Shown here: one piece after another, positions 1,899 through 63,594 of the stretch
Layout of the letters: the number at the start of each line of letters is the position of its first letter
How positions within the stretch are numbered: position 1 is the stretch's first letter
Assembly (NCBI RefSeq): GCF_006345805.1
Contig: NC_043003.1
Coordinates: 18,786,001-18,850,000 of the forward strand
Direction of reading: 5' to 3'
Length of the DNA stretch: 64,000 nt
Source of the DNA: Octopus sinensis
Lineage: Eukaryota
Notes under the pieces: generated by a model
Databases searched by the model: none
What the model was told of the DNA's origin: nothing
The model's input: the letters and a program-made list of their open reading frames with translations, nothing else
Made by a program: the position numbers and the translations under genes

Positions 1899-2112
1899 CT
1901 TTTCTACTAAAGGTACAAGGCCTGAAATTTTGGAGGAGGGGACTAGTCGATTATATTGACCCCAGTGTTTCACTGGTACTTAATTTATCAACCCCGAAAG
2001 GATGAAAAGTAAGGTCGACCTCAGTGGAATTTGAACTCAGAACGTGCAGACAGACGAGATGCTGCTAAGTATTTTGCTCAGCATGCTATCAGTTCTACCA
2101 GCTCACTGTCTT
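1899..2112 (-). mobile_element. SINE family B (ggcgagctggcagaa head, (TTA)n tail)
   Basis: Reverse strand has B-box-like gagttcaaattcc and the family body ...ggccttgtacctttagtagaaa. Confidence 0.85.
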
Positions 2113-2119
2113 AATTATA

Positions 2120-2413
2120 ATAATAATTCTTTCTACTATAGGCACATCATCATCATCATCGTTTAACGTCTGCTTTCCATGCTAGCATGGGTTGGACGGT
2201 TCAACTGGGGTCTGGGAGGCCAGAAGGCTGCACCAGGCCAGTCAGATCTGGCAATGTTTCTACAGCTGGATGCCCTTCCTAACGCACAAGGTCTGAAATT
2301 TTTTTTTGGGGGGGGGGGTCTAGTTGATTAGATCGACCCCCAGTGTTTCACTGGTACTTAAGGTACTTATTTTATCGACCCCAACAGATGAAAGGTAAAG
2401 TCAACCTCGGCAA
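2120..2413 (-). mobile_element. SINE family B, 5'-truncated, interrupted by nested insertion
   Basis: Tail ttctactataggcaca continues as gcacaaggtctgaaat after the insert; ends at gtcaacctcggc. Confidence 0.85.
2147..2283 (-). mobile_element. Headless ~137-nt retroelement with RTE-type (TGA)n tail, TSD gcaca
   Basis: gcaca at 2142-2146 and 2284-2288; tail aacccatgctagcatggaaagcagacgttaaacgatgatga on minus strand. Confidence 0.9.
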
Positions 2414-2989: not shown

Positions 2990-3241
2990 GAGGGTGGAGA
3001 GAATTAGCTTTTATTATTACTATTACTATTCCAGCTGGCAAAATCGTTAGCACATCAGACAAAATGCTTAGCAGCATTTCTTCCGGTTCTCTACATTTTA
3101 AGTCAACTTTGCCTTTAATCAGGGATGGATTAAAGTACCAGCTGAACACTGGGACAATGTGACTGACTTACATACACCCTTCCACCAAAATTTCAAGCTT
3201 TGTGCATACAGAAGAAATTATTATTATTATTATTATTATTA
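2990..3241 (+). mobile_element. SINE family B with short internal insert
   Basis: agctggcaaaatcgttagcac...gtcaactttgcctt...ttgtgcatacagaagaaattattatt. Confidence 0.8.
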
Positions 3242-3486
3242 AGGTGGCGAGCTGGCAGAATCATTAGCATGCCAGGTAAAATGCTTAGCAGTATTTCACC
3301 TGTCTTTACGTTCTGAGTTCCAATTACACCAAGGTCAACTTTGCCTTTCATCCTTTTGGGGTCGATAAATTAATTACCAGTGAATCACTGGGGTCAATGC
3401 AATCAACTAGTCCTCTCCCTAAAATGTCAGGCCTTGTGCCTATACACAAAGGATATTTATCATTATTATTATTATTATTATTATTA
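3242..3486 (+). mobile_element. SINE family B, directly after the previous copy's (TTA)n tail
   Basis: ggcgagctggcagaa head, gagttccaattacacc B-box-like motif, (TTA)n tail. Confidence 0.9.
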
Positions 3487-6576: not shown

Positions 6577-6712
6577 TTAGGAAGGGCATCCAGCCATAGA
6601 AACACTGCCAGATCTGACTGGGCCTGATGAAGCCTTCCGGCTTCACAGACCCCAGTTGAACCGTCCAACCCATGCTAGCATGGAAAACGGACGCTAAATG
6701 ATGATGATGATG
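6577..6712 (+). mobile_element. Headless ~136-nt retroelement with RTE-type (TGA)n tail
   Basis: Begins ttaggaagggcatcc, ends aacggacgctaaatgatgatgatgatg; no clear TSD. Confidence 0.85.
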
Positions 6713-6797
6713 TCAGTCCTTTGGAATTTCTCAAACTCACAGCAAAGACAAACTGGTACACTTTAATATATATGCCAAAAAGAACAGAAAAGACAAA

Positions 6798-8813
6798 TAA
6801 AAAAAAACAAATTTAGAGCATGTTTCAAATTACTTTGAATTGAAGAACCTACAAGCCTTATTCCAAATACCAACTATCGTATTAACAAGAGTTACAAAAG
6901 TACTGAAATCATTAAGATCTAATTTGAAAATGAACTGAAAGACATAAACTGTATTATTAATAGGGAGTGTAACAAAGTAAAAATACACCAATTCTTTCCA
7001 TTTTAATTAAGACTACCTAAAATGTCATCTCTCAACAATGTGACAATATACTTTAACATTTATAGAAATTAAGTTAACATAATTTGTTACCACCATCTCT
7101 AATTTTTGTCCATCTACTCCCATCCATTCATATAATGTAGGGTAACCACATTTCTCTTCTATAGCAAGACACTTGTGCTTGTCCCTCTATCCTTTAGCCT
7201 CCAAACACCTCATATAAAACCAATATCCCACTCTCAAATACTCTTGCCTCATTTAGTAGAGGGGGCTTTGGCAATCCCACTAATGCTGGTGGAATGGCAA
7301 AAGCACCCAGTACACACAGTAAAAAGGTTAGCATTAACAAGGGCATTTATAGTAGAAACCATGACATAAGAGTTCACTGTGGCCCTGGGGCTTGGCAAAC
7401 CCTGTCAAACAATCCAACTTGTGCCATCATGGAAAGCAGTTGTATGATGATGATCATCATCATCATTATCATTATCACAATGAAGATGATATATTTCACT
7501 GTTAGCACTTACTGACATTTACTTTCCTCCCACCCCACTTCTTGCAGAAATTACACTCTTCGATGTCTAAATTTACCAAACATTTTTGTTAGTATTTTCT
7601 ACAATCAAAAAAATGCAACCTACACATAATTGTAATTGATAAGATAATAAAGAAAAAACATATGCAGAATGCATTAATATATAATTTACAACCCCAACTT
7701 AATAACTGAATTAGACAAACCGACTTCAACATAAAATCCAACTGCCTGCTGAACTTAAAAGAAATACAATATCAAGAAACTAAAAAAAAAAAAAAAAAAT
7801 TAAAAAAAAAACAAATTTAGAGCATGTTTCAAATTACTTTGAATTGAAGAACCTACAAGCCTTATTCCAAATACCAACTATCGTATTAACAAGAGTTACA
7901 AAAGTACTGAAATCATTAAGATCTAATTTGAAAATGAACTGAAAGACATAAACTGTATTATTAATAGGGAGTGTAACAAAGTAAAAATACACCAATTCTT
8001 TCCATTTTAATTAAGACTACCTAAAATGTCATCTCTCAACAATGTGACAATATACTTTAACATTTATAGAAATTAAGTTAACATAATTTGTTACCACCAT
8101 CTCTAATTTTTGTCCATCTACTCCCATCCATTCATATAATGTAGGGTAACCACATTTCTCTTCTATAGCAAGACACTTGTGCTTGTCCCTCTATCCTTTA
8201 GCCTCCAAACACCTCATATAAAACCAATATCCCACTCTCAAATACTCTTGCCTCATTTAGTAGAGGGGGCTTTGGCAATCCCACTAATGCTGGTGGAATG
8301 GCAAAAGCACCCAGTACACACAGTAAAAAGGTTAGCATTAACAAGGGCATTTATAGTAGAAACCATGACATAAGAGTTCACTGTGGCCCTGGGGCTTGGC
8401 AAACCCTGTCAAACAATCCAACTTGTGCCATCATGGAAAGCAGTTGTATGATGATGATCATCATCATCATTATCATTATCACAATGAAGATGATATATTT
8501 CACTGTTAGCACTTACTGACATTTACTTTCCTCCCACCCCACTTCTTGCAGAAATTACACTCTTCGATGTCTAAATTTACCAAACATTTTTGTTAGTATT
8601 TTCTACAATCAAAAAAATGCAACCTACACATAATTGTAATTGATAAGATAATAAAGAAAAAACATATGCAGAATGCATTAATATATAATTTACAACCCCA
8701 ACTTAATAACTGAATTAGACAAACCGACTTCAACATAAAATCCAACTGCCTGCTGAACTTAAAAGAAATACAATATCAAGAAACTAAAAAAAAAAAATTA
8801 AAAAAAAAACAAA
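6798..8813. repeat. Near-perfect tandem duplication, unit 1004 bp
   Basis: 6798-7800 repeated at 7801-8813; ORF track gives identical peptides at offset 1004; t(a)9-10caaa at all three junctions. Confidence 0.97.
7255..7478 (+). mobile_element. Degenerate SINE family D fragment (duplicated at 8259-8482)
   Basis: ccctgtcaaacaatccaacttgtgccatcatggaaagcag...tgatgatgatc tail. Confidence 0.65.
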
Positions 8814-10658: not shown

Positions 10659-10922
10659 TCATCATCATTGTTTGACCGTGGTCGAGACAAAGGAATTTAC
10701 CTTGCTACGCCAGACTTCACGGTCCATCATGGCATTACGGAGGTCCTGTTGCTGGATGCCTGTATCCCTGGAGATTACATCAGGGTAGGAGAGTGTGCGC
10801 CCTCTGGTATTGCGAGTAGATGGCTTCCAGAGGAGAAGAGTAGAAATTGCCTCGTTTTCAGCTCTACAACAATGTCCAGCAAACTGGACTCTCCTACCTT
10901 TCACAAGAGATGACACAGGTGG
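10659..10922 (-). mobile_element. RTE-type LINE 3' end, stop-free, (TGA)n tail
   Basis: Translates PPVSSLVKGRRVQFAGHCCRAENEAISTLLLWKPSTRNTRGRTLSYPDVISRDTG...MMDREVWRSKV, the RxxFAGH...LLW...RGR...DR.W pattern of RTE-group ORF C-termini. Confidence 0.9.
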
Positions 10923-11017
10923 TAGAAGACACTTGTCCAAGGTGCCACGCAGTGGGACTGAACCCAGAACCATATGGTTGGCAAGCAAGCTACTTACCAC
11001 ACAGCCACTCCTGCGCC
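10923..11017 (-). mobile_element. SINE family A 5' head only, fused to the RTE 3' end
   Basis: ggcgcaggagtggctgtgtggtaag...ggttcagtccc...gtgtcttcta; A-box-like tggctgtgtgg and B-box-like motif intact. Confidence 0.92.
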
Positions 11018-11050
11018 ATGGTCAGTGTTTTCTGTGATGTTTGGTTCTAT

Positions 11051-11407
11051 TGGTAAGTAGCTTGCTTGCCAACCACATGGTTCTGGGTTCAGTCCCACTG
11101 CGTGGCACCTTGGACAAGTGTCTTCTATTATAGCCTCGGGCCGACCAAAGCCTTGTAAGGGGATTTGGTAGATGGAAACTGAAAGAAGCTCATTATATGT
11201 GTGTGTGTGTATACGTTTGTGTGTGTTTGTCCCCCAACATCGCTTGACAACCGATGCTGGTGTGTTTACGTCCCCATAACTTAGCAGTTCAGCAAAAGAG
11301 AACGATAGAATAAGTCCTGGGGTCAATGTCTTTGATAAAGGCGGTGCTCCAGCATGACCACAGTCAAATGACTGAAACAAGTAAAAGAGTAAAGAGTAAA
11401 AGAGTAT
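11051..11407 (+). mobile_element. SINE family A, well preserved, lacking first ~18 nt
   Basis: Full body to gaaacaagtaaaagagtaaagagtaaaagagt tail. Confidence 0.92.
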
Positions 11408-11580
11408 ATAAAAATATCCAGGACAACAAATTGTATGCTTTGTGACCTAAGTTAATACACTGTACACCAAACAAATAATCGTTGCATAACTAAGTAAGTC
11501 TTATATCATTGCTATGCTTCAGTTGACCGAGTGTCACACACCAGAGTTGAATGAACAAGTAGACATTACACATTCTTTCC

Positions 11581-13468: not shown

Positions 13469-13806
13469 CCCTTTTACTGCAGAAATCAGTTTTATATAAC
13501 AATCTATCTTTTACTGAGGAATGTCATGTTTGAAACTATTTTTTGTTGAGATGTGTCAAGTTTATTGAGCCAATAACATGAAGAAAATACCAATTCTATT
13601 TTTTTGGTGGATACTTAATATCATTACTGGAATCATCATCATCATCGTTTAACGTCTGCTTTCCATGCTAGCATGGGTTGGACGATTGGACTGAGGTCTG
13701 GCAAACCATATGGCTGCACCAGACTCCAATCAGATCTGGCAGAGTTTCTACAGTTGGATGCCCTTCCTAACGAATGACTATGAATTTTAATTCTGCACTT
13801 AAAGGG
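13469..13806. mobile_element. TTAA-type (piggyBac-like) MITE with nested retroelement
   Basis: TIRs cccttttactgcagaa / ttctgcacttaaaggg (14/16); flanks ttaaa and ttaa. Confidence 0.65.
13634..13771 (-). mobile_element. Headless ~138-nt retroelement with RTE-type tail, TSD gaat
   Basis: gaat at 13630-13633 and 13772-13775; same 5' boundary as 2147-2283. Confidence 0.9.
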
Positions 13807-15214: not shown

Positions 15215-15575
15215 ACAATATTGTGACGTGTGTGGCACCAATACAGCATTGGGTGGTCATACACCCATACAACCGTCATCAACCAGGAGAATTCATCTAT
15301 GAAGCAATTGCCCCAGCTCTCCTTCAGGCGAAAACGATGTGGTGGACAACAAAAAACCTGGCTGACGACAGTCAAGGCTGATCTGGAACCCAACCTAAGC
15401 CCCCATATCTACGGCATTCACCACTGGAATAAGGAGTGGTTGGAGATCACGCATTCATTAGCCTCAAATCGCCAGGTCTGGTTGGCGTTTGTGAGAGATG
15501 CAGCATTGAGGATGAATGAAGTCAGCTCAACCCACCCCGGGTGGATGCTGTCTCAAGACAAGAAGAAGACATACA
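15215..15575 (+). mobile_element. RTE-clade LINE 3' end with (AAG)n tail
   Basis: Translates RRKRCGGQQKTWLTTVKADLEP...LASNRQVWLAFVRDA (GGQxKTW and A.DR..W motifs); frameshifted upstream. Confidence 0.8.
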
Positions 15576-15650
15576 ACTTAGAAGGGACATGTGTGTGCAC
15601 ATGTATGTGTGCGTACATATATGTGTGTATGTGTCTGAGTGCATGTTGCC

Positions 15651-15965
15651 TTGTGTTTCAGTCACCTGACTGCAGCCATGCTGGGGCACAAGCTTGAAGG
15701 GTTTAGTCAAACAAATCAATCCCAGAACTTATTTTTGAGTTTGGTATTTATTCTACCAGCTTCTATAAGTTAATAAACCAACACCGGTCAAGAGGTGGTG
15801 GGGAACACACACACACACACACAACAAGCTTTAATTAGTTTCTTTTGACCAAATCCACTCACAAGGCTATAGTAGACGACACTCGCCGAAGGTGCCACAC
15901 AGTGGGACTGAATATAAGCCAACATGGTTGGAAAACATGCTTCTTAACCACACAGCCACATGAGC
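15651..15965 (-). mobile_element. SINE family A
   Basis: tttcagtcacctgactgcagccatgctgggg...gtgggactgaa...accacacagcc. Confidence 0.85.
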
Positions 15966-23650: not shown

Positions 23651-24309
23651 GATTTAAATGAAGAGTCTCTTTATGAAGGATAATTGTAAGTTCATTTTGT
23701 AGGTTAGTAGTTTAGTTCAAATTCAGTTCTGACCCTCTCTCCAAATTGATCAAAAACAAATTTGTGATAACAGTGGGACATAGAGGACAAAAATAGACAA
23801 TATTGAGCATACTGAATTTCTGAGTCACTGATTAACATTGAAACATTCCTCCCACAGACTAAGCGTTCTCACAGCATAGATGAAGAACATCCAACAACAA
23901 CAATCATTTTTTAAAGCTAAAAAATATATGAAGAAAATAGAAATTCTATAAGGAAACCAATGTGAATATATCTAATGTCGGATGAAGAACATCAGCAAAT
24001 CTTTGATGACAACTACCATCTTAACTGAACTTAACTTTGGATACTAGAATAAGTTTATTTCACTTCATGCTGTGAACAATATATTGAGTTTAACATTTAA
24101 CTGTTTCAATACCCATTGGAGATCACCTCTAGTTCCAGAAAAACAAAACCTAGCATTTTTAAAGTATCCATATGTAAATTAAAACCATCCATCATAATTT
24201 AATGCAAGAATTTTTTATGATAAAAACATTTTCCTTATTATGAAAAGGTAATTTAACTAAGCATCTCTAAGTTCTTGAGTATTTTCAAAATTAATTAAAA
24301 CAGATATAG

Positions 24310-28264: not shown

Positions 28265-28442
28265 TCATGCAAGTACTTGGTGACCTCACTAGTGCCATAT
28301 AAAAAGATCCAGTCCACACTGTAAAGTGGTTGGCATTAGGAAGGGCATCCAGCTGTAGAAACCAGTCCTCTGAGCCACTGGTTTCTGTCTAACTCTCCAA
28401 CTTAAGCCCACATGGATAAAGGGATGTTACACAATGATGATG
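28265..28442 (+). mobile_element. SINE family D 3' part, internally deleted
   Basis: gtggttggcattaggaagggcatccagctgtagaaacc. Confidence 0.7.
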
Positions 28443-28554
28443 GTGTGTGCATATAAATGTATACACATACATCTATGTGTGTATGCATGTTTGTTTGTTT
28501 TGTCATTTAATTTGCTGAGTCTGGTAGAAAGGACAGTGACTATGGCCTTTGCAC

Positions 28555-38999: not shown

Positions 39000-39720
39000 G
39001 TGTTTCCTACAGAGGTAGCAGGATTTTCTAGAAAAGTCCACTTCTGAAGAGAAAGAATGTGTAAACTGAAATGGCAGTTGGGTCCCAGTAGCTACCCCCA
39101 CCACTACCATCACCTTCCTCCCCCTCATCCTATTCACCCCCCTCCCGAGTCAAGTGATACGAAGGAGTAACACAGCAAGAATGGATTGTGTTAGCAGTAG
39201 TGACTGTAGTCCTCTTATTAGTGATACAGCGATGGCAAGTGTGGTAGTGGCATTAGCAGTAGTAACAGTAGTAGTAGCAGAACAAGTGTACACTGTACAC
39301 AAAATAGCAGCATCACATGAATAAGGAGAGACGGTGGGGAGGGGGGGAAGGAGGGCAGAGACAGACAGACAGACAGAGAGGCTTTTGCTAAATACACTTT
39401 GACAAAGCTAATTGTTGCTACACACTATAATGTATGGAAAGAAATCCAAGTTGAGTTGTCGGAGAGCGAGCGGGTGCAGCAGAGGGGGGGGTGCCCCCTT
39501 CTCCCCACCCCGGACACCCCACTCCCAATAACATTTGAAAAGCAGTTTAGCTATTATCATCCATGATCAGTCAGTGAAACTTAACATTTTCCAATTGCTA
39601 TCAAATCTTCAGTTACAATACAACTAGCTCCATTCAACACTGTGCTGCCATCACAGATAGTGGGAGGCTGACAAGCCGGCAAGAAGATGAACAGCAAGTT
39701 TTATATATATATAAAAAAAA
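39000..39720. promoter_or_regulatory. GC/CpG-elevated, repeat-free patch; candidate promoter or 5' UTR
   Basis: Several CpGs (gtcggagagcgagcggg, ccggac, gccggc) and G/C tracts within a SINE-free island; function inferred only. Confidence 0.3.
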
Positions 39721-43304: not shown

Positions 43305-43787
43305 ACAGTCATGGTTGTGTGGTAAGAGATCTACTTCCCAACCACATGACTTCAGGCTCAGTCCCACTGCACCGCACGTTGGACAAGTGTCTTTTACTAT
43401 AGCCCCAAGCTGACCAAAGCCATGTGAATGGATTTAATAGATGGACACTGAAAGAAGCCCATTGTAAGATATATATATTTCAGGGTTGGGTCCCACAGAG
43501 GTAATGACAGACCTTTGGCATTATGTCATGCTTGAGAAGAAGAACCATCAGGTTGAGAAAAATCACAGTCGTGGCAGATACTAGTATCACACAAATGGCA
43601 CCTGTGCCAGTAGCATGTAAAAGCATCCATTACACTCTCAGATTGGTTGGTGTTAGGAAGGGCATCCAGCCATAGAAAATCGTACCAGATCAGACTGGAG
43701 TCTGGTGCAGCCTTCCAGCTTACCAGCCCTGGTCAAACAGTCCAACCCATGCCAGTATGGACAACAGATGTATGATGATGATGATAG
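43305..43787 (+). mobile_element. SINE family D, full length (family-A head, RTE-type tail)
   Basis: Head catggttgtgtggtaag...; tail ggtgttaggaagggcatcc...aacccatgccagtatgg...tgatgatga. Confidence 0.88.
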
Positions 43788-43998
43788 TATAAAGTCAGGG
43801 GGGTGTGAGAGATATATTCACCTAATTTTCTAAGGATTTTGGCTATTTTGAAACCTTCTTCATGTAGTATTTATTTCAGTATTCAAGAAATTATGCATAC
43901 ATGATTTTGCATTATTATGTATACTCAGCATTATACAATTGTATATTTACAAATTAATGCAAAGAAAGAAAGCTAGCTCATCAGATCACCAGAACATC

Positions 43999-52310: not shown

Positions 52311-52513
52311 CGGCGAGCTGGCAGAAATGTTAGCACACTGGGTGAAATGCTTAACGGTGTTTCATCTGTCTTTATGTTCTGAGTTCAAATTCCGTCAAGG
52401 TCGACTTTGCATTTCATCATTTCAGGTTTGATAAATCAAGTACCAGTTGTGTACTGGAGTCGATCTAATTGACTAGCCCCCTCCCCCAAAAATTTGGGCC
52501 TTATGCCTAGAGT
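52311..52513 (+). mobile_element. SINE family B
   Basis: ggcgagctggcagaaatgttagcac...gggccttatgcctagagtagaaaag. Confidence 0.9.
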
Positions 52514-52730: not shown

Positions 52731-52846
52731 TTGGAGAGCTGGCAGAATCGTTAGCATGCCAGGCAAAATGCTTATTGGTATTTCATCCATCTTTATGTTC
52801 TGAGTTCAAATTCTGTCATGGCCAACTTCACCTTTCATCCTTTCAG
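52731..52846 (+). mobile_element. SINE family B 5' half
   Basis: ggagagctggcagaatcgttagc...cacctttcatcctttc. Confidence 0.85.
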
Positions 52847-54431: not shown

Positions 54432-54673
54432 ATTTACACACACAATAAATATATATATCTTTATTGCCCACAAGGGGCTTAACATAGGGAGGACAAACAA
54501 AGGGATTAAGTTGATTACATCGACCCCAGTATGTAACTGGTACTTTATTTATCGACCCCGAAAGAATGAAAGGCAAAACCGACCTCGGTTGAATTTGAAC
54601 TCAGAATGTAGCAGCAGACGAAATACTGCTAAGAATTTTGCCCGGCGTGCTAACGTTTCTGCCAGCTCGCCTT
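54432..54673 (-). mobile_element. SINE family B tail variant, young
   Basis: tttattgcccacaagggg...tgcccggcgtgctaacgtttctgccagctcgcc with CpGs retained. Confidence 0.92.
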
Positions 54674-61130: not shown

Positions 61131-62203
61131 GAGCAAACCAAAGCCTTTTAGTAGAAGCAAATGATAATAATCCTTCTTTAGTTAAGATATTACATAAAAA
61201 GTCTCGAGTTTCCTTACTGATGTATAATATATAAATTATATGAGACCCAAAGTTTTGCTAAGATTGATTTCATAATTGTCCTTTTTGTATGAATTATTGC
61301 CTTGTCTTTCTTAATCAAGAAACAAGAGAATTTTGTCCTACTGAAAATACTAGCTGATGATCATTTAAAGAAAATTAAATGATGCTGATTCAAGATTTTA
61401 ATTACTAAGTGATTTATATTTTTAACTACATTTCCAATAACCCTTATACAAATGTTGCTGAATAAATAGATTGGCTTATGACAGAAATAGATTTAAATTA
61501 GTATATCTCTCAGAGGTAAAAGTATGTAACCTATTGAACAACATATTACAAATGGATGGATTATATTACTTTGAGTAAATACCAAAAGTAGTAGAACTTG
61601 TTATGTGATGATTGTTCATTATTTGGTTTGTAAAACTGAATTTTCCATGTTTTTTCATAAGACACAATTTTTAAACAAACAAAATCTCAACAACAACAGA
61701 AATTCTGATTCGAATTATATTCAACAGATCCACAATTCCATTAATATAAATTAGATTTTCAAATGATTTCAAAAGACAGTTGTAATATTGTAGCCGAAAG
61801 CTAAATTTTACATAGTGACTTTCTTTCAGGTGTGGGAAATAATACAAATTGATTTCTTTTGGCTTTTGATTCAGCAAAGGAAATAAAATATATAACAAAT
61901 GATATTATAATAGTGTGGCAATTTGTTTGGGAAATTTGTACTACAAACCTCTAAGTGTATGAGGGGACAAGAACAAAGGATAATTGTTTTCAGAAGAGAA
62001 AATACTAATCTTCAAGAGAAGAATTCTCTAAAAACTGTGACCTTAAGGCTCATAAATTCTAGGGATGTCAACCACAAATTCATTCTCTGTAACTCGAAAT
62101 TTTTAGGTTCTTGTGAATTAAAAGAATTCATAACCAAAATATTTTGAAAGCAAACTTTAGTTATCATTTTATCATGAATTATAAATTAAGAGCACTGAAA
62201 AAG

Positions 62204-62921
62204 ACTACAGTGTCTTAATTCCTTTCCCTTCCATCTCTTTGCACTGGGATTTAAATAATCACTTCCATTATCTTCATTGCATTGGTGTCATATTTTTGTT
62301 TTGTATTGGCACAGATTGGAGGGAATTTTTCGCAGCAGTGTTTTATGGCTAGATGCCCTTACTGGCTCCAGTAGGACATGCAGGGATACAGCTTACCTAT
62401 TCTAAAATCTGGGACACACAGGATAATGGTTCACATTTAGAAATGGTTAATCTTTAGCCTTTGAACCAGCCAGATCTGACTCTGACCTCTCAGGACTACC
62501 CTCCAATGCCATTCTAAAAATAAACAATCATATCATCAAAATTGCAAAGCTATGAGATAATGTATGGTTAATTCAAAACAACTAAATAAACATTACAATT
62601 GACAGAATAATCTGAATGCTAAAGGGTTAAAGTAAAATCCATTTCGGCAATTATGTTTAAGTTAATGTATTATATTTAGTTTACAGACCATTTCTAAATG
62701 TGAACCATTATCCTCTGTATCCCAGATTTTAGAATAGGTAAGCTGTATCCTTGCATGTCCTACTGGAGTCAGTAAGGGCATCTAGTAATAAAAATCTGTC
62801 TTGAAAAATTCCATCCAATCCATGCCAGTACAGAAAAAATTGATGCAATGAAGATAATGGAAGTGTTTATTTAAATCCCAGTGAGAAGAGATGGAAAGAA
62901 AAGGAATTAAGACGATGTAGT
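62204..62921. repeat. Long inverted repeat, arms about 62204-62447 and 62687-62921
   Basis: Inner 99 bp 95/99 identical, outer 71 bp 66/71, middle ~60 bp about 70% (manual alignment). Confidence 0.95.
62451..62626. mobile_element. TTAA MITE (second family) in the loop of the inverted repeat
   Basis: TTAA at 62447-62450 and 62627-62630; tctttagc / gctaaaggg termini. Confidence 0.7.
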
Positions 62922-63594
62922 TTAGAAATGAAGATTGAAAAGTCAAGCTTCAAAGACAAAATGGTTCGTTATAAGGAAATATAGTGATATGCTGTTACTC
63001 AAACTCATACAATCCATTCTGGGTGTAGAACAACACAAATTAAATTCATGATATTCCAGAGAAGATATAAGATCATACATCAGGACTAAAACTACTTCAA
63101 GTGGTAGAGTCATATTTACTGTTTGATTCACTTTAAATTGTAATAATATATTAGATATCAAAGACTTTTGTTGCATCAGTTAACAGTTCACAGATATATG
63201 GAATGCAGATAAGTGTGCCCTACACTTATATTACATACTAGTAATAAGCATTGTTAATCCCCAATTATCGACAAGGTGTCTTAAATGCTTTGCCAATTGC
63301 AGAATGCAGACTATGCTTTTATCATCTAATTTCACCATTTCTGTCAGCACACACAGAACAGGCAAAGTAATGCACTAGAAACAACATAACCACACAGGTT
63401 GCACTACCTAGCAAGAGTGATGGACAAACTAATTTGCAGTATTTCTCTTACAGCTCTTTATGTTCAAATTTCACCTGGAGTTGACCTCATCATTTTTGAT
63501 AAAACACATACCAGTAATGTACAAATTCACTTAATTTGCTATGTATGTATATGTGGCCTTATGTAAAAGCAGCAGCAGTAAGAGTTGCAGTAAG

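What the first reader, a model, noticed from the sequence alone, without database searches (positions are those of the whole stretch)
62204..62921. ~240-bp-arm inverted repeat with patchy identity and predicted A-C editing sites
Seen: arms align at 95/99 (inner, 62349-62447 vs 62687-62785), about 70% (middle, the SINE-tail-derived part) and 66/71 (outer, non-SINE sequence). The loop holds a TTAA MITE plus about 55 bp. The arms include non-SINE flank, so this is not two independent SINE copies. Established: coleoid cephalopods edit dsRNA heavily and ADAR favours A opposite C. Inference: arm-to-arm gene conversion or selection for an RNA duplex. On a minus-strand transcript the adenosines at 62751 and 62769 face C.
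Basis: partly seen in the sequence, partly recalled or inferred. Interest (0 to 1): 0.7.

Follow-up and report, generated by a model that had tools for sequence, protein, structure and literature searches.

The report
Decaying inverted duplication forming a long hairpin
A 240-base stretch of non-coding cephalopod-like DNA, which carries an old SINE fragment, is present twice in opposite orientation; it could fold into a long RNA hairpin, but nothing in the sequence suggests it is more than one of the many neutral inverted repeats of such genomes.

Summary
The inverted repeat is real. The arms are 62204-62447 and 62687-62921, with 213 of 245 columns identical (87%) and a 239-nt loop. Either strand would fold into a ~240-bp hairpin (about -380 kcal/mol). 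Each arm has three parts: about 50-60 nt of unique sequence, an old SINE 3' "tail" module, and about 77 nt of unique sequence.

- The substitutions are spread evenly once the choice of windows is corrected for (P about 0.2).
- The longest identical run is no longer than chance predicts.
- Only the indels cluster, in a T-rich tract.
- Transitions are not in excess.
- G·U pairs and folding energy do not favour either strand.

The two A-C sites are geometrically correct, but they are 2 of 7 on that strand, and 62769 follows a G, which ADAR disfavours. A duplex this long would be edited promiscuously.

My best reading is a neutral local inverted duplication roughly 13 My old, whose loop was later enlarged by a TTAA-flanked insert. 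A multi-copy foldback element is not excluded, because no available collection holds this genome. Transcription and editing could not be tested.

The parts
62204..62447 (.). Left arm of the inverted repeat (244 nt)
   Evidence: 87% identical to the reverse complement of 62687-62921, E = 3.6e-79.
62687..62921 (.). Right arm of the inverted repeat (235 nt)
62254..62370 (-). SINE 3' tail module in the left arm, with the degenerate GATG-type tail pointing outward. It includes the T-rich, indel-rich tract 62282-62335.
   Evidence: nhmmer with the family-C SINE profile, E = 1.2e-5; alignment A3; arm-profile matches elsewhere in the window cover only arm columns of about 50-168.
62764..62860 (+). SINE 3' tail module in the right arm (AAGGGCATCTAG ... 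CCATCCAATCCATGC ... degenerate GATG tail)
   Evidence: nhmmer E = 1.3e-10; the motif AAGGGCATCYRG has 11 hits in the window against 0.66 expected; alignment A3.
62204..62253 (.). Outer part of the left arm with no SINE-like match. Its partner is 62861-62921. Together with the adjoining degenerate tail (62204-62281) the two arms are about 91% identical here.
   Evidence: No other copy in the window with BLAST or with the arm profile. In other SINE copies the sequences diverge right after the tail.
62861..62921 (.). Outer part of the right arm with no SINE-like match
62371..62447 (.). Inner part of the left arm with no SINE-like match. Its partner is 62687-62763. This is the best-conserved stretch of the repeat.
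   Evidence: The SINE head profile does not match it; no other copy in the window; 95/99 over 62349-62447.
62687..62763 (.). Inner part of the right arm with no SINE-like match
62448..62686 (.). Loop or spacer (239 nt)
62451..62626 (.). 176-bp insert in the loop, flanked by TTAA (62447-62450 and 62627-62630), with a short imperfect terminal inverted repeat (CCCTTTAGC type). It looks like a piggyBac-type MITE, but that is not verified.
   Evidence: The exact motif TTAACCCTTTAGC occurs once in the window. No second copy in the window.
62631..62686 (.). Remaining original spacer. With TAA of the TTAA site it makes about 59 nt before the insertion.

Best explanation
I read this as a DNA-level, local inverted (fold-back type) duplication of a segment of about 240 bp. 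When it was copied, the segment already contained an old, decayed SINE 3' fragment with unique sequence on both sides. The two copies were left head-to-head around a spacer of about 59 nt.

Since then the arms have drifted apart neutrally. The Jukes-Cantor distance is about 0.096, which is roughly 13 My per arm on the published octopus calibration. Slippage indels accumulated in the T-rich part of the SINE tail. A TTAA-flanked element of 176 bp inserted at the arm-loop junction and widened the loop to 239 nt.

The region has no protein-coding or Rfam-type content. If it lies in a transcript, the RNA of either strand would fold into a hairpin of about 240 bp. That hairpin would be treated like any long intramolecular dsRNA of repeat origin: ADAR would edit many adenosines in it, and Dicer might cleave it.

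What is shown and what is inferred:
- Shown: the anatomy, the composite make-up of the arms, the absence of any signal of conversion or selection, and the predicted fold.
- Inferred: the duplication mechanism, the age, transcription, and editing.
For: 1. The repeat is real and long.
2. The SINE module is only the middle of each arm. Sequence without SINE similarity is shared on both sides.
3. Both arms carry the same degenerate tail (GCAATGAAGATAATGGAAGTG, a 22-nt identical run) rather than a clean GATG repeat. The SINE was therefore already old when it was duplicated.
4. There is no other copy of the arms or the loop in 64 kb.
5. No target-site duplication of 5 bp or more flanks the unit.
6. 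Substitutions fit uniform decay: scan-corrected P = 0.19 and 0.21, and the longest identical run is 32 nt against 37 expected.
7. Transitions to transversions are 12:9, against 1.97 for the other repeats of the window.
8. G·U pairs number 7 on the plus and 5 on the minus transcript.
9. Folding energy is -378.3 and -380.3 kcal/mol, with z-scores of -36 and -26.
10. There are no Rfam or tRNA matches.
11. Literature: long, near-perfect dsRNA-forming loci are exceptionally frequent in octopus (4.4e-3 of random 50-mers) and are the main hyper-editing substrate (PMC5625713). Duplexes over 100 bp are edited at up to 50% of adenosines (PMC4693238). The age calibration is JC 0.09 = 25 My (PMC13282606).
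Against: Copy number in the genome could not be measured. None of the searchable collections holds this animal's DNA: the positive control with the abundant SINE head also found nothing. Zero extra copies in 64 kb only excludes a very abundant family, roughly more than 1e5 copies.

The left end reads TA-CAGTG (62206-62212), which resembles a Tc1/mariner terminus.

A weak 11/16 direct repeat (62671-62686 and 62866-62881) could mean that the inner boundary of the repeat sits at a retroelement 5' end. That would point to a retrotransposition-linked origin.

Indels do cluster in one part of the arm.

There are no RNA data, so the step 'works as an ADAR substrate' is inference only.
Confidence: 0.55

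Rival explanations
1. The unit is one copy of a multi-copy foldback or MITE-like DNA transposon with terminal inverted repeats of about 240 bp and a short loop, for example a Tc1/mariner derivative. In that case the hairpin is a property of the family, as in the palindromic Harbinger repeat of Xenopus.
For: The size before the nested insertion (about 545 bp) and the architecture fit a long-TIR MITE. The left terminus reads TA|CAGTGTC, which is Tc1/Tc3-like, and TA is present at both ends. Tc1-Mariner elements and MITEs are active and diverse in octopus (PMC13282606). A palindromic repeat is the main edited element in frog (PMC5625713).
Against: The right terminus reads CATCG, not CAGTG. The terminal 17-mer occurs nowhere else in the window. 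There is no second copy of any non-SINE part in 64 kb. No target-site duplication longer than the self-complementary TA is present. Each arm embeds an old SINE fragment, so an inverted duplication must have occurred anyway.
Confidence: 0.25
2. The repeat arose during retrotransposition, by twin priming, by snap-back self-priming of the cDNA, or by double target-primed reverse transcription. On this reading the inner boundary is the 5' end of a retroelement.
For: Another element in the window, 10922-11433, shows exactly such a structure: an inverted 5' piece of SINE-A with 77-nt arms at 99% identity and a 51-nt spacer. The spacer length is similar. A weak 11/16 direct repeat lies just upstream of the inner boundary and just after the SINE tail (my reading).
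Against: The arms run about 60 nt past the degenerate SINE tail into sequence that other copies do not share. The SINE head profile does not match the inner part. Both arms share an already decayed tail, so the copying followed a long period of decay. An 11/16 match in AT-rich DNA is not significant.
Confidence: 0.08
3. The hairpin is kept by arm-to-arm gene conversion or by selection for an RNA duplex, for instance as an hpRNA or endo-siRNA locus, an ADAR-recruiting element, or site-specific editing at A-C mismatches.
For: The duplex is long and stable on both strands. Inner identity is 96%. The A:C at 62751 has a favourable A_A_G context. The strand composition of non-repeat DNA (A>T by 7.3%, C>G by 4.6%) may indicate a transcription unit on the minus strand.
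Against: Substitutions do not cluster and there is no long identical tract. Transitions are not in excess. There is no strand asymmetry in wobble pairs or in folding energy. The arms differ by 9% plus 5 indels, far from the near-identity of converting palindromes. Such loci are very common in octopus.
Confidence: 0.07
4. The arms are two independent insertions of the same SINE in opposite orientation, like an inverted Alu pair.
For: Each arm contains a SINE tail module in opposite orientation. Three other SINE-SINE inverted pairs occur in the window.
Against: The homology extends about 60 nt beyond the tail and about 77 nt upstream of the module, at 91-96% identity. Independent SINE copies in the window are 66-83% alike and diverge immediately after the tail.
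Confidence: 0.02

Closest known systems
Inverted Alu pairs (IRAlus) and other inverted SINE pairs in introns and 3' UTRs, the main ADAR hyper-editing substrates
   Same: It is a SINE-containing inverted repeat with arms a few hundred bp long and a short spacer. It is predicted to form an intramolecular dsRNA of more than 100 bp, the kind that is edited promiscuously (PMC5625713, PMC4693238).
   Different: The arms are not separate SINE insertions. They are two copies of one genomic segment in which the SINE piece is a passenger between unique flanks. Editing was not observed here.
Foldback elements and long-TIR MITEs, for example the palindromic Harbinger repeat of Xenopus and Tc1/mariner-derived hairpin MITEs
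   Same: It consists almost entirely of two long inverted arms and a short loop, and one end has a TA + CAGTG motif.
   Different: No multi-copy evidence, no clear target-site duplication, and the terminal motif is present on one arm only.
Fold-back (inverted) segmental duplications from replication template switching or hairpin-mediated break repair
   Same: The arms contain arbitrary genomic sequence, there is a short unique spacer, the ends are sharp, and no transposon hallmarks are present.
   Different: The mechanism cannot be shown from one sequence. No ancestral or orthologous empty site is available.
Drosophila-type hpRNA loci that yield endo-siRNAs
   Same: A long hairpin is predicted from a non-coding inverted repeat.
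   Different: There are no small-RNA data, no known target and no sign of conservation. The arm divergence pattern looks neutral.
Twin-priming 5' inversions of LINE/SINE insertions
   Same: It is a head-to-head arrangement with a spacer of about 50-60 nt. A clear example sits in the same window at 10922-11433.
   Different: In the target repeat the arms include the decayed 3' tail and post-tail sequence, which twin priming does not duplicate.

Membership tests
Inverted pair of independent SINE insertions (IRAlu-like) | Arm homology ends at the SINE boundaries, and each copy has its own flanks and target-site duplication. | tested here: not met
   Homology continues about 60 nt past the tail and about 77 nt upstream of the SINE module.
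Inverted pair of independent SINE insertions (IRAlu-like) | Identity between the arms is similar to that between other copies of the family. | tested here: not met
   The arms are 87% identical overall and 91-96% outside the tail tract. The SINE tail module of the arms matches other copies in the window at only 64-71%, and other SINE copies are 66-83% alike among themselves.
Foldback / long-TIR MITE DNA transposon | Target-site duplication directly flanking the terminal inverted repeats. | tested here: inconclusive
   There is no direct repeat of 5 bp or more. Only TA lies inside the arm ends, and TA is self-complementary.
Foldback / long-TIR MITE DNA transposon | Multiple dispersed copies with the same termini. 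| not testable with these tools
   No further copy in the 64-kb window. No collection with this genome is on hand: the control pattern was also negative and the protein look-ups were empty.
Foldback / long-TIR MITE DNA transposon | A superfamily terminal motif conserved on both ends. | tested here: inconclusive
   The left end reads TACAGTG (Tc1-like). The right end reads TACATCG, with 2 mismatches.
Local fold-back inverted duplication | The arms contain unique, non-mobile sequence and a unique spacer. | tested here: met
   The inner 77 nt, the outer 50-60 nt and the spacer have no other copy in the window and no SINE similarity. This is limited to the 64 kb available.
Local fold-back inverted duplication | An orthologous or ancestral site with a single copy. 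| not testable with these tools
   No related genome is accessible.
ADAR hyper-editing substrate | Intramolecular, near-perfect duplex of more than 100 bp. | tested here: met
   A predicted stem of about 240 bp on either strand, with z-scores of -36 and -26. This is a prediction only.
ADAR hyper-editing substrate | The region is transcribed and shows clustered A-to-G RNA-DNA differences. | not testable with these tools
   No RNA data. The strand composition skew is only an indirect hint of minus-strand transcription.
hpRNA / endo-siRNA locus | 20-23-nt small RNAs from the stem, and a hairpin conserved by compensatory change. | not testable with these tools
   No small-RNA or comparative data. 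The within-locus tests show no selection signal.
Palindrome maintained by arm-to-arm gene conversion | Near-identity of the arms, or long identical tracts beyond what chance predicts. | tested here: not met
   The arms differ at 9% of sites plus 5 indels. The longest identical run is 32 nt against a mean of 37 in permutations (P = 0.68).
piggyBac-type MITE (the loop insert) | TTAA target-site duplication and terminal inverted repeats of the CCC...GGG type. | tested here: inconclusive
   TTAA is present on both sides. The right end is ...AAAGGG. The left end is degenerate. The ends match at 9 of 11 positions.
piggyBac-type MITE (the loop insert) | Multiple copies in the genome. | not testable with these tools
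   There is no second copy in the window.

The most novel reading that the evidence does not exclude
The hairpin could be a functional RNA element: a lineage-specific hpRNA or endo-siRNA precursor, or an intronic ADAR-recruiting ('editing inducer') hairpin in a long gene transcribed from the minus strand. Its inner stem would then be kept paired by selection or by occasional arm-to-arm conversion.
Probability: 0.05. Interest if true: 0.6.

Novelty: new member of a known kind. Interest (0 to 1): 0.17.

Why it matters
If my reading is right, this matters little on its own. It is one more example of the very abundant hairpin-forming repeats that are thought to account for much of the hyper-editing signal in octopus.

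It is still useful as a worked case in two ways:
- A SINE-containing inverted repeat can be a segmental inverted duplication rather than a pair of SINE insertions.
- 'Patchy identity' between arms can come from slippage in a low-complexity tail, without any gene conversion.

It would gain interest only if RNA data showed dense strand-specific editing or small RNAs, together with conservation across species.

Tried and rejected
**External copies (all empty)**
- Exact-protein look-ups of three window ORFs next to or inside the repeat found nothing.
- A profile search with the translated arms found nothing.
- A search with a LINE-like ORF, intended to confirm the organism, found nothing.
- A metagenome scan with a 25-mer from the arm found nothing. 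The control scan with the abundant SINE head also found nothing, so these collections do not hold this genome and the negatives say nothing about copy number.
- A literature search for printed SINE sequence strings found nothing relevant.
- The octopus genome paper could not be fetched.

**RNA families**
- Rfam found nothing at gathering thresholds for the whole window or at E up to 1 for 62000-63100. No tRNA was found.

**Hypotheses tested and dropped**
- The inner arm is not a recognisable SINE head.
- An apparent internal repeat of the terminus at about 62336 (CAGTGT.TTA, matching the left end at 10 of 12 positions) lies in the SINE module and is absent from the right arm, so it is not a transposase-binding repeat.
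- Target-site duplications typical of hAT, PIF, Mutator or piggyBac around the whole unit are absent.
- An assembly artefact is rejected, because the arms differ by 9% plus indels and the loop carries an insertion.

**Other**
- The scan for coding exons found only LINE remnants and no convincing exon, so the host gene, if there is one, could not be named.
- The bacterial promoter and terminator scan is irrelevant to this animal-like sequence.

Full report
**1. Observation**

I read 61800-63400 and ran the repeat finder. It reports two inverted blocks:
- 62295-62447 with 62687-62839, 153 nt, 88% complementary.
- 62204-62282 with 62843-62921, 79 nt, 91% complementary.

A gapped local alignment joins them into one repeat. 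The arms are 62204-62447 and 62687-62921. Of 245 columns, 213 are identical (87%), with 21 substitutions and 11 gap columns in 5 indel events. BLAST gives E = 3.6e-79.

Identity by part:
- Outer, 62204-62281: 71/78.
- Middle, 62282-62348: 47 matches, 10 mismatches, 11 gap columns.

The loop is 62448-62686 (239 nt).

**2. What the arms are made of**

The window is AT-rich (GC 31-39%) and repeat-rich. About a quarter of it matches another part of itself. It holds several SINE families:
- A tRNA-derived family of about 400 bp.
- A short family of about 137 bp.
- A family of about 215 bp at 24290, 33450, 44340 and 51270.

From memory, these sequences resemble the abundant SINEs of Octopus. I could not confirm the organism with any database here.

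A profile built from the four 215-bp copies matches the arms only over its 3' part: 62764-62860 on the plus strand (E = 1.3e-10) and 62370-62254 on the minus strand (E = 1.2e-5). A profile built from the two arms finds other places in the window only with arm columns of about 50-168.

Alignment A3 shows the shared module: AAGGGCATC(C/T)AG ... CCATCCAA(C/T)CCATGC ... then a GATG-type microsatellite. In all other copies the sequence diverges right after that tail. The two arms stay 91% identical for another 60 nt or so.

Each arm therefore has three parts: unique outer sequence, a SINE 3' module with its tail pointing outward, and a unique inner stretch of about 77 nt. The SINE is a passenger in a larger duplicated segment.

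Both arms also share the same degenerate tail (GCAATGAAGATAATGGAAGTG, a 22-nt identical run). The SINE had therefore already decayed when the segment was copied.

**3. The loop**

TTAA occurs at 62447-62450 and again at 62627-62630. The 176 bp between them end in ...GCTAAAGGG and begin with TCTTTAGCC. The ends match as an inverted repeat at 9 of 11 positions, with one terminal base missing on the left.

This fits a piggyBac-type MITE inserted at the arm-loop junction. There is no second copy in the window, so 'MITE' remains unverified. Without the insert the spacer is about 59 nt.

**4. Is the patchy identity meaningful?**

With the three parts chosen after looking at the data, a chi-square test gives P = 0.018, and inner against middle gives P = 0.007. 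Allowing for the free choice of windows changes this:
- A 99-column window with 4 or fewer of the 21 substitutions arises in 19% of permutations.
- A 57-column window with 10 or more arises in 21% of permutations.
- The longest identical run is 32 columns, below the permutation mean of 37 (P = 0.68).

Substitutions are therefore compatible with uniform decay, and no recent conversion tract is visible.

What does cluster are the 5 indel events, all within 62282-62335. That stretch is a T-rich, low-complexity part of the SINE tail. The same stretch also varies in length among the other SINE copies. Replication slippage is a sufficient explanation.

**5. Is there a signal of selection for an RNA duplex?**

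- The 21 substitutions are 12 transitions and 9 transversions. The ratio among the other repeat pairs of the window is 1.97 (4126:2098; Fisher P = 0.37). Wobble-compatible changes are not enriched.
- The 12 transitions give 7 G·U pairs on a plus-strand RNA and 5 on a minus-strand RNA.
- The predicted folds are equally good: -378.3 kcal/mol (z = -36) for the plus strand and -380.3 kcal/mol (z = -26) for the minus strand.

Nothing singles out one strand, and nothing departs from neutral expectation.

**6. The predicted editing sites**

On a minus-strand RNA the adenosines at 62751 and 62769 do face C. The same transcript has five more A:C mismatches, at 62211, 62240, 62301, 62306 and 62786. A plus-strand RNA has five.

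Position 62751 sits in A_A_G, a favourable context. Position 62769 follows a G, the neighbour ADARs avoid.

More importantly, duplexes longer than about 100 bp are deaminated promiscuously, at up to half of their adenosines (PMC4693238). Each transcript has 136 A:U-paired adenosines in the stem, about 110 of them without a 5' G. The expected outcome is a hyper-edited cluster, not two specific sites.

Whether the region is transcribed is unknown. Non-repeat DNA across the whole window has A>T by 7.3% (P = 1.6e-37) and C>G by 4.6% (P = 6e-9), with the same sign of AT skew in all eight bins. By analogy with vertebrate introns, this would fit a long transcription unit on the minus strand. That is inference only. 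I found no convincing exon.

**7. Origin**

*Independent SINE insertions* are excluded (section 2).

*A mobile foldback element or MITE* is not excluded.
- For it: the left end reads TA-CAGTGTC, which is Tc1/Tc3-like, and TA lies at both ends.
- Against it: the right end reads CATCG; no longer target-site duplication exists; the terminal 17-mer occurs nowhere else in the window; and no other copy of the non-SINE parts exists in 64 kb. That last point only excludes families of roughly 1e5 copies or more.

*A retrotransposition-linked origin* was considered because the window holds a clear example of one. At 10922-11014 an inverted copy of the first 93 nt of SINE-A, with the true 5' end, faces a 5'-truncated SINE-A at about 11051-11410. 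The arms are 77 nt at 99% identity with a 51-nt spacer. This is a twin-priming-like structure. The target repeat differs from it: its arms include an already decayed tail and post-tail sequence.

The most economical reading is a local fold-back duplication at the DNA level.

*Age.* The Jukes-Cantor distance between the arms is 0.096. With the published octopus calibration (JC 0.09 to consensus = 25 My; PMC13282606), this gives roughly 13 My per arm. That is close to the lower bound of the O. vulgaris-O. bimaculoides split quoted in the same paper, so a synteny test would be informative.

**8. Comparison with what is known**

Functionally the locus resembles inverted Alu pairs and other repeat-derived hairpins that dominate hyper-editing in animals. 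Porath et al. report that octopus has an exceptionally high fraction of loci able to form long, near-perfect dsRNA (4.4e-3 of random 50-mers) and the strongest hyper-editing signal (PMC5625713). That makes this locus one of very many.

Structurally it differs from an inverted SINE pair, because it is a segmental inverted duplication. It may or may not be a foldback transposon. There is no Rfam family and no tRNA.

**9. What could not be done**

None of the searchable collections contains this genome. Copy number, orthologous loci, transcription, editing and small RNAs all remain untested. The tests and the outcomes I expect are listed under next steps.

**10. Verdict**

The feature is real. 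The evolutionary and functional inference is not supported by any test that could be run here. The locus is ordinary for this kind of genome and of low interest, unless RNA or comparative data show otherwise.

Noticed in passing
window 10922-11433: A SINE-A insertion with an inverted 5' piece. 10922-11014 is an inverted copy of SINE-A positions 1-93, including the true 5' end. It faces a 5'-truncated SINE-A starting near 11051. The arms, 10923-10999 and 11051-11127, are 99% complementary with a 51-nt spacer. This looks like twin priming with a 77-nt overlap, and it would also form a hairpin.
   Followed up: partly
window 6780-8813: A tandem duplication of a unit of about 1 kb. The two copies are 98.7-98.8% identical and give identical ORFs in both copies.
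   Followed up: no
window 1-64000: There is a consistent strand asymmetry in non-repeat DNA: A>T by 7.3% and C>G by 4.6%, with the same sign of AT skew in all 8-kb bins. It may be the footprint of one long transcription unit on the minus strand.
   Followed up: partly
window 2135-2285, 6579-6723, 13614-13768, 28328-28455, 43645-43788, and 24290, 33450, 44340, 51270: One 3' tail module (AAGGGCATCCAG ... CCAACCCATGC ... GATG repeats) is shared by at least two element types: short copies of about 137 bp with an extra block of about 50 nt, and SINEs of about 215 bp with a distinct head. This suggests several SINE families, or 5'-truncated LINE ends, that use the same partner.
   Followed up: partly
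window 15230-15697 (+) and 10665-11000 (-): These ORFs look like C-terminal remnants of LINE reverse-transcriptase proteins. The 155-aa ORF found no relative in the protein collection.
   Followed up: partly
window 39000-39570: A non-repeat stretch with unusually high GC (0.47-0.51, against about 0.34 in the rest of the window) and open frames on both strands. It could be an exon, a promoter region or an unrecognised repeat.
   Followed up: no
window 1935-2127 / 3226-3418; 52312-52474 / 54509-54671; 52733-52844 / 54560-54671: Ordinary inverted pairs of SINE copies, 74-81% complementary and 1-2 kb apart. They serve as a baseline for what independent inverted SINE insertions look like in this region.
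   Followed up: no
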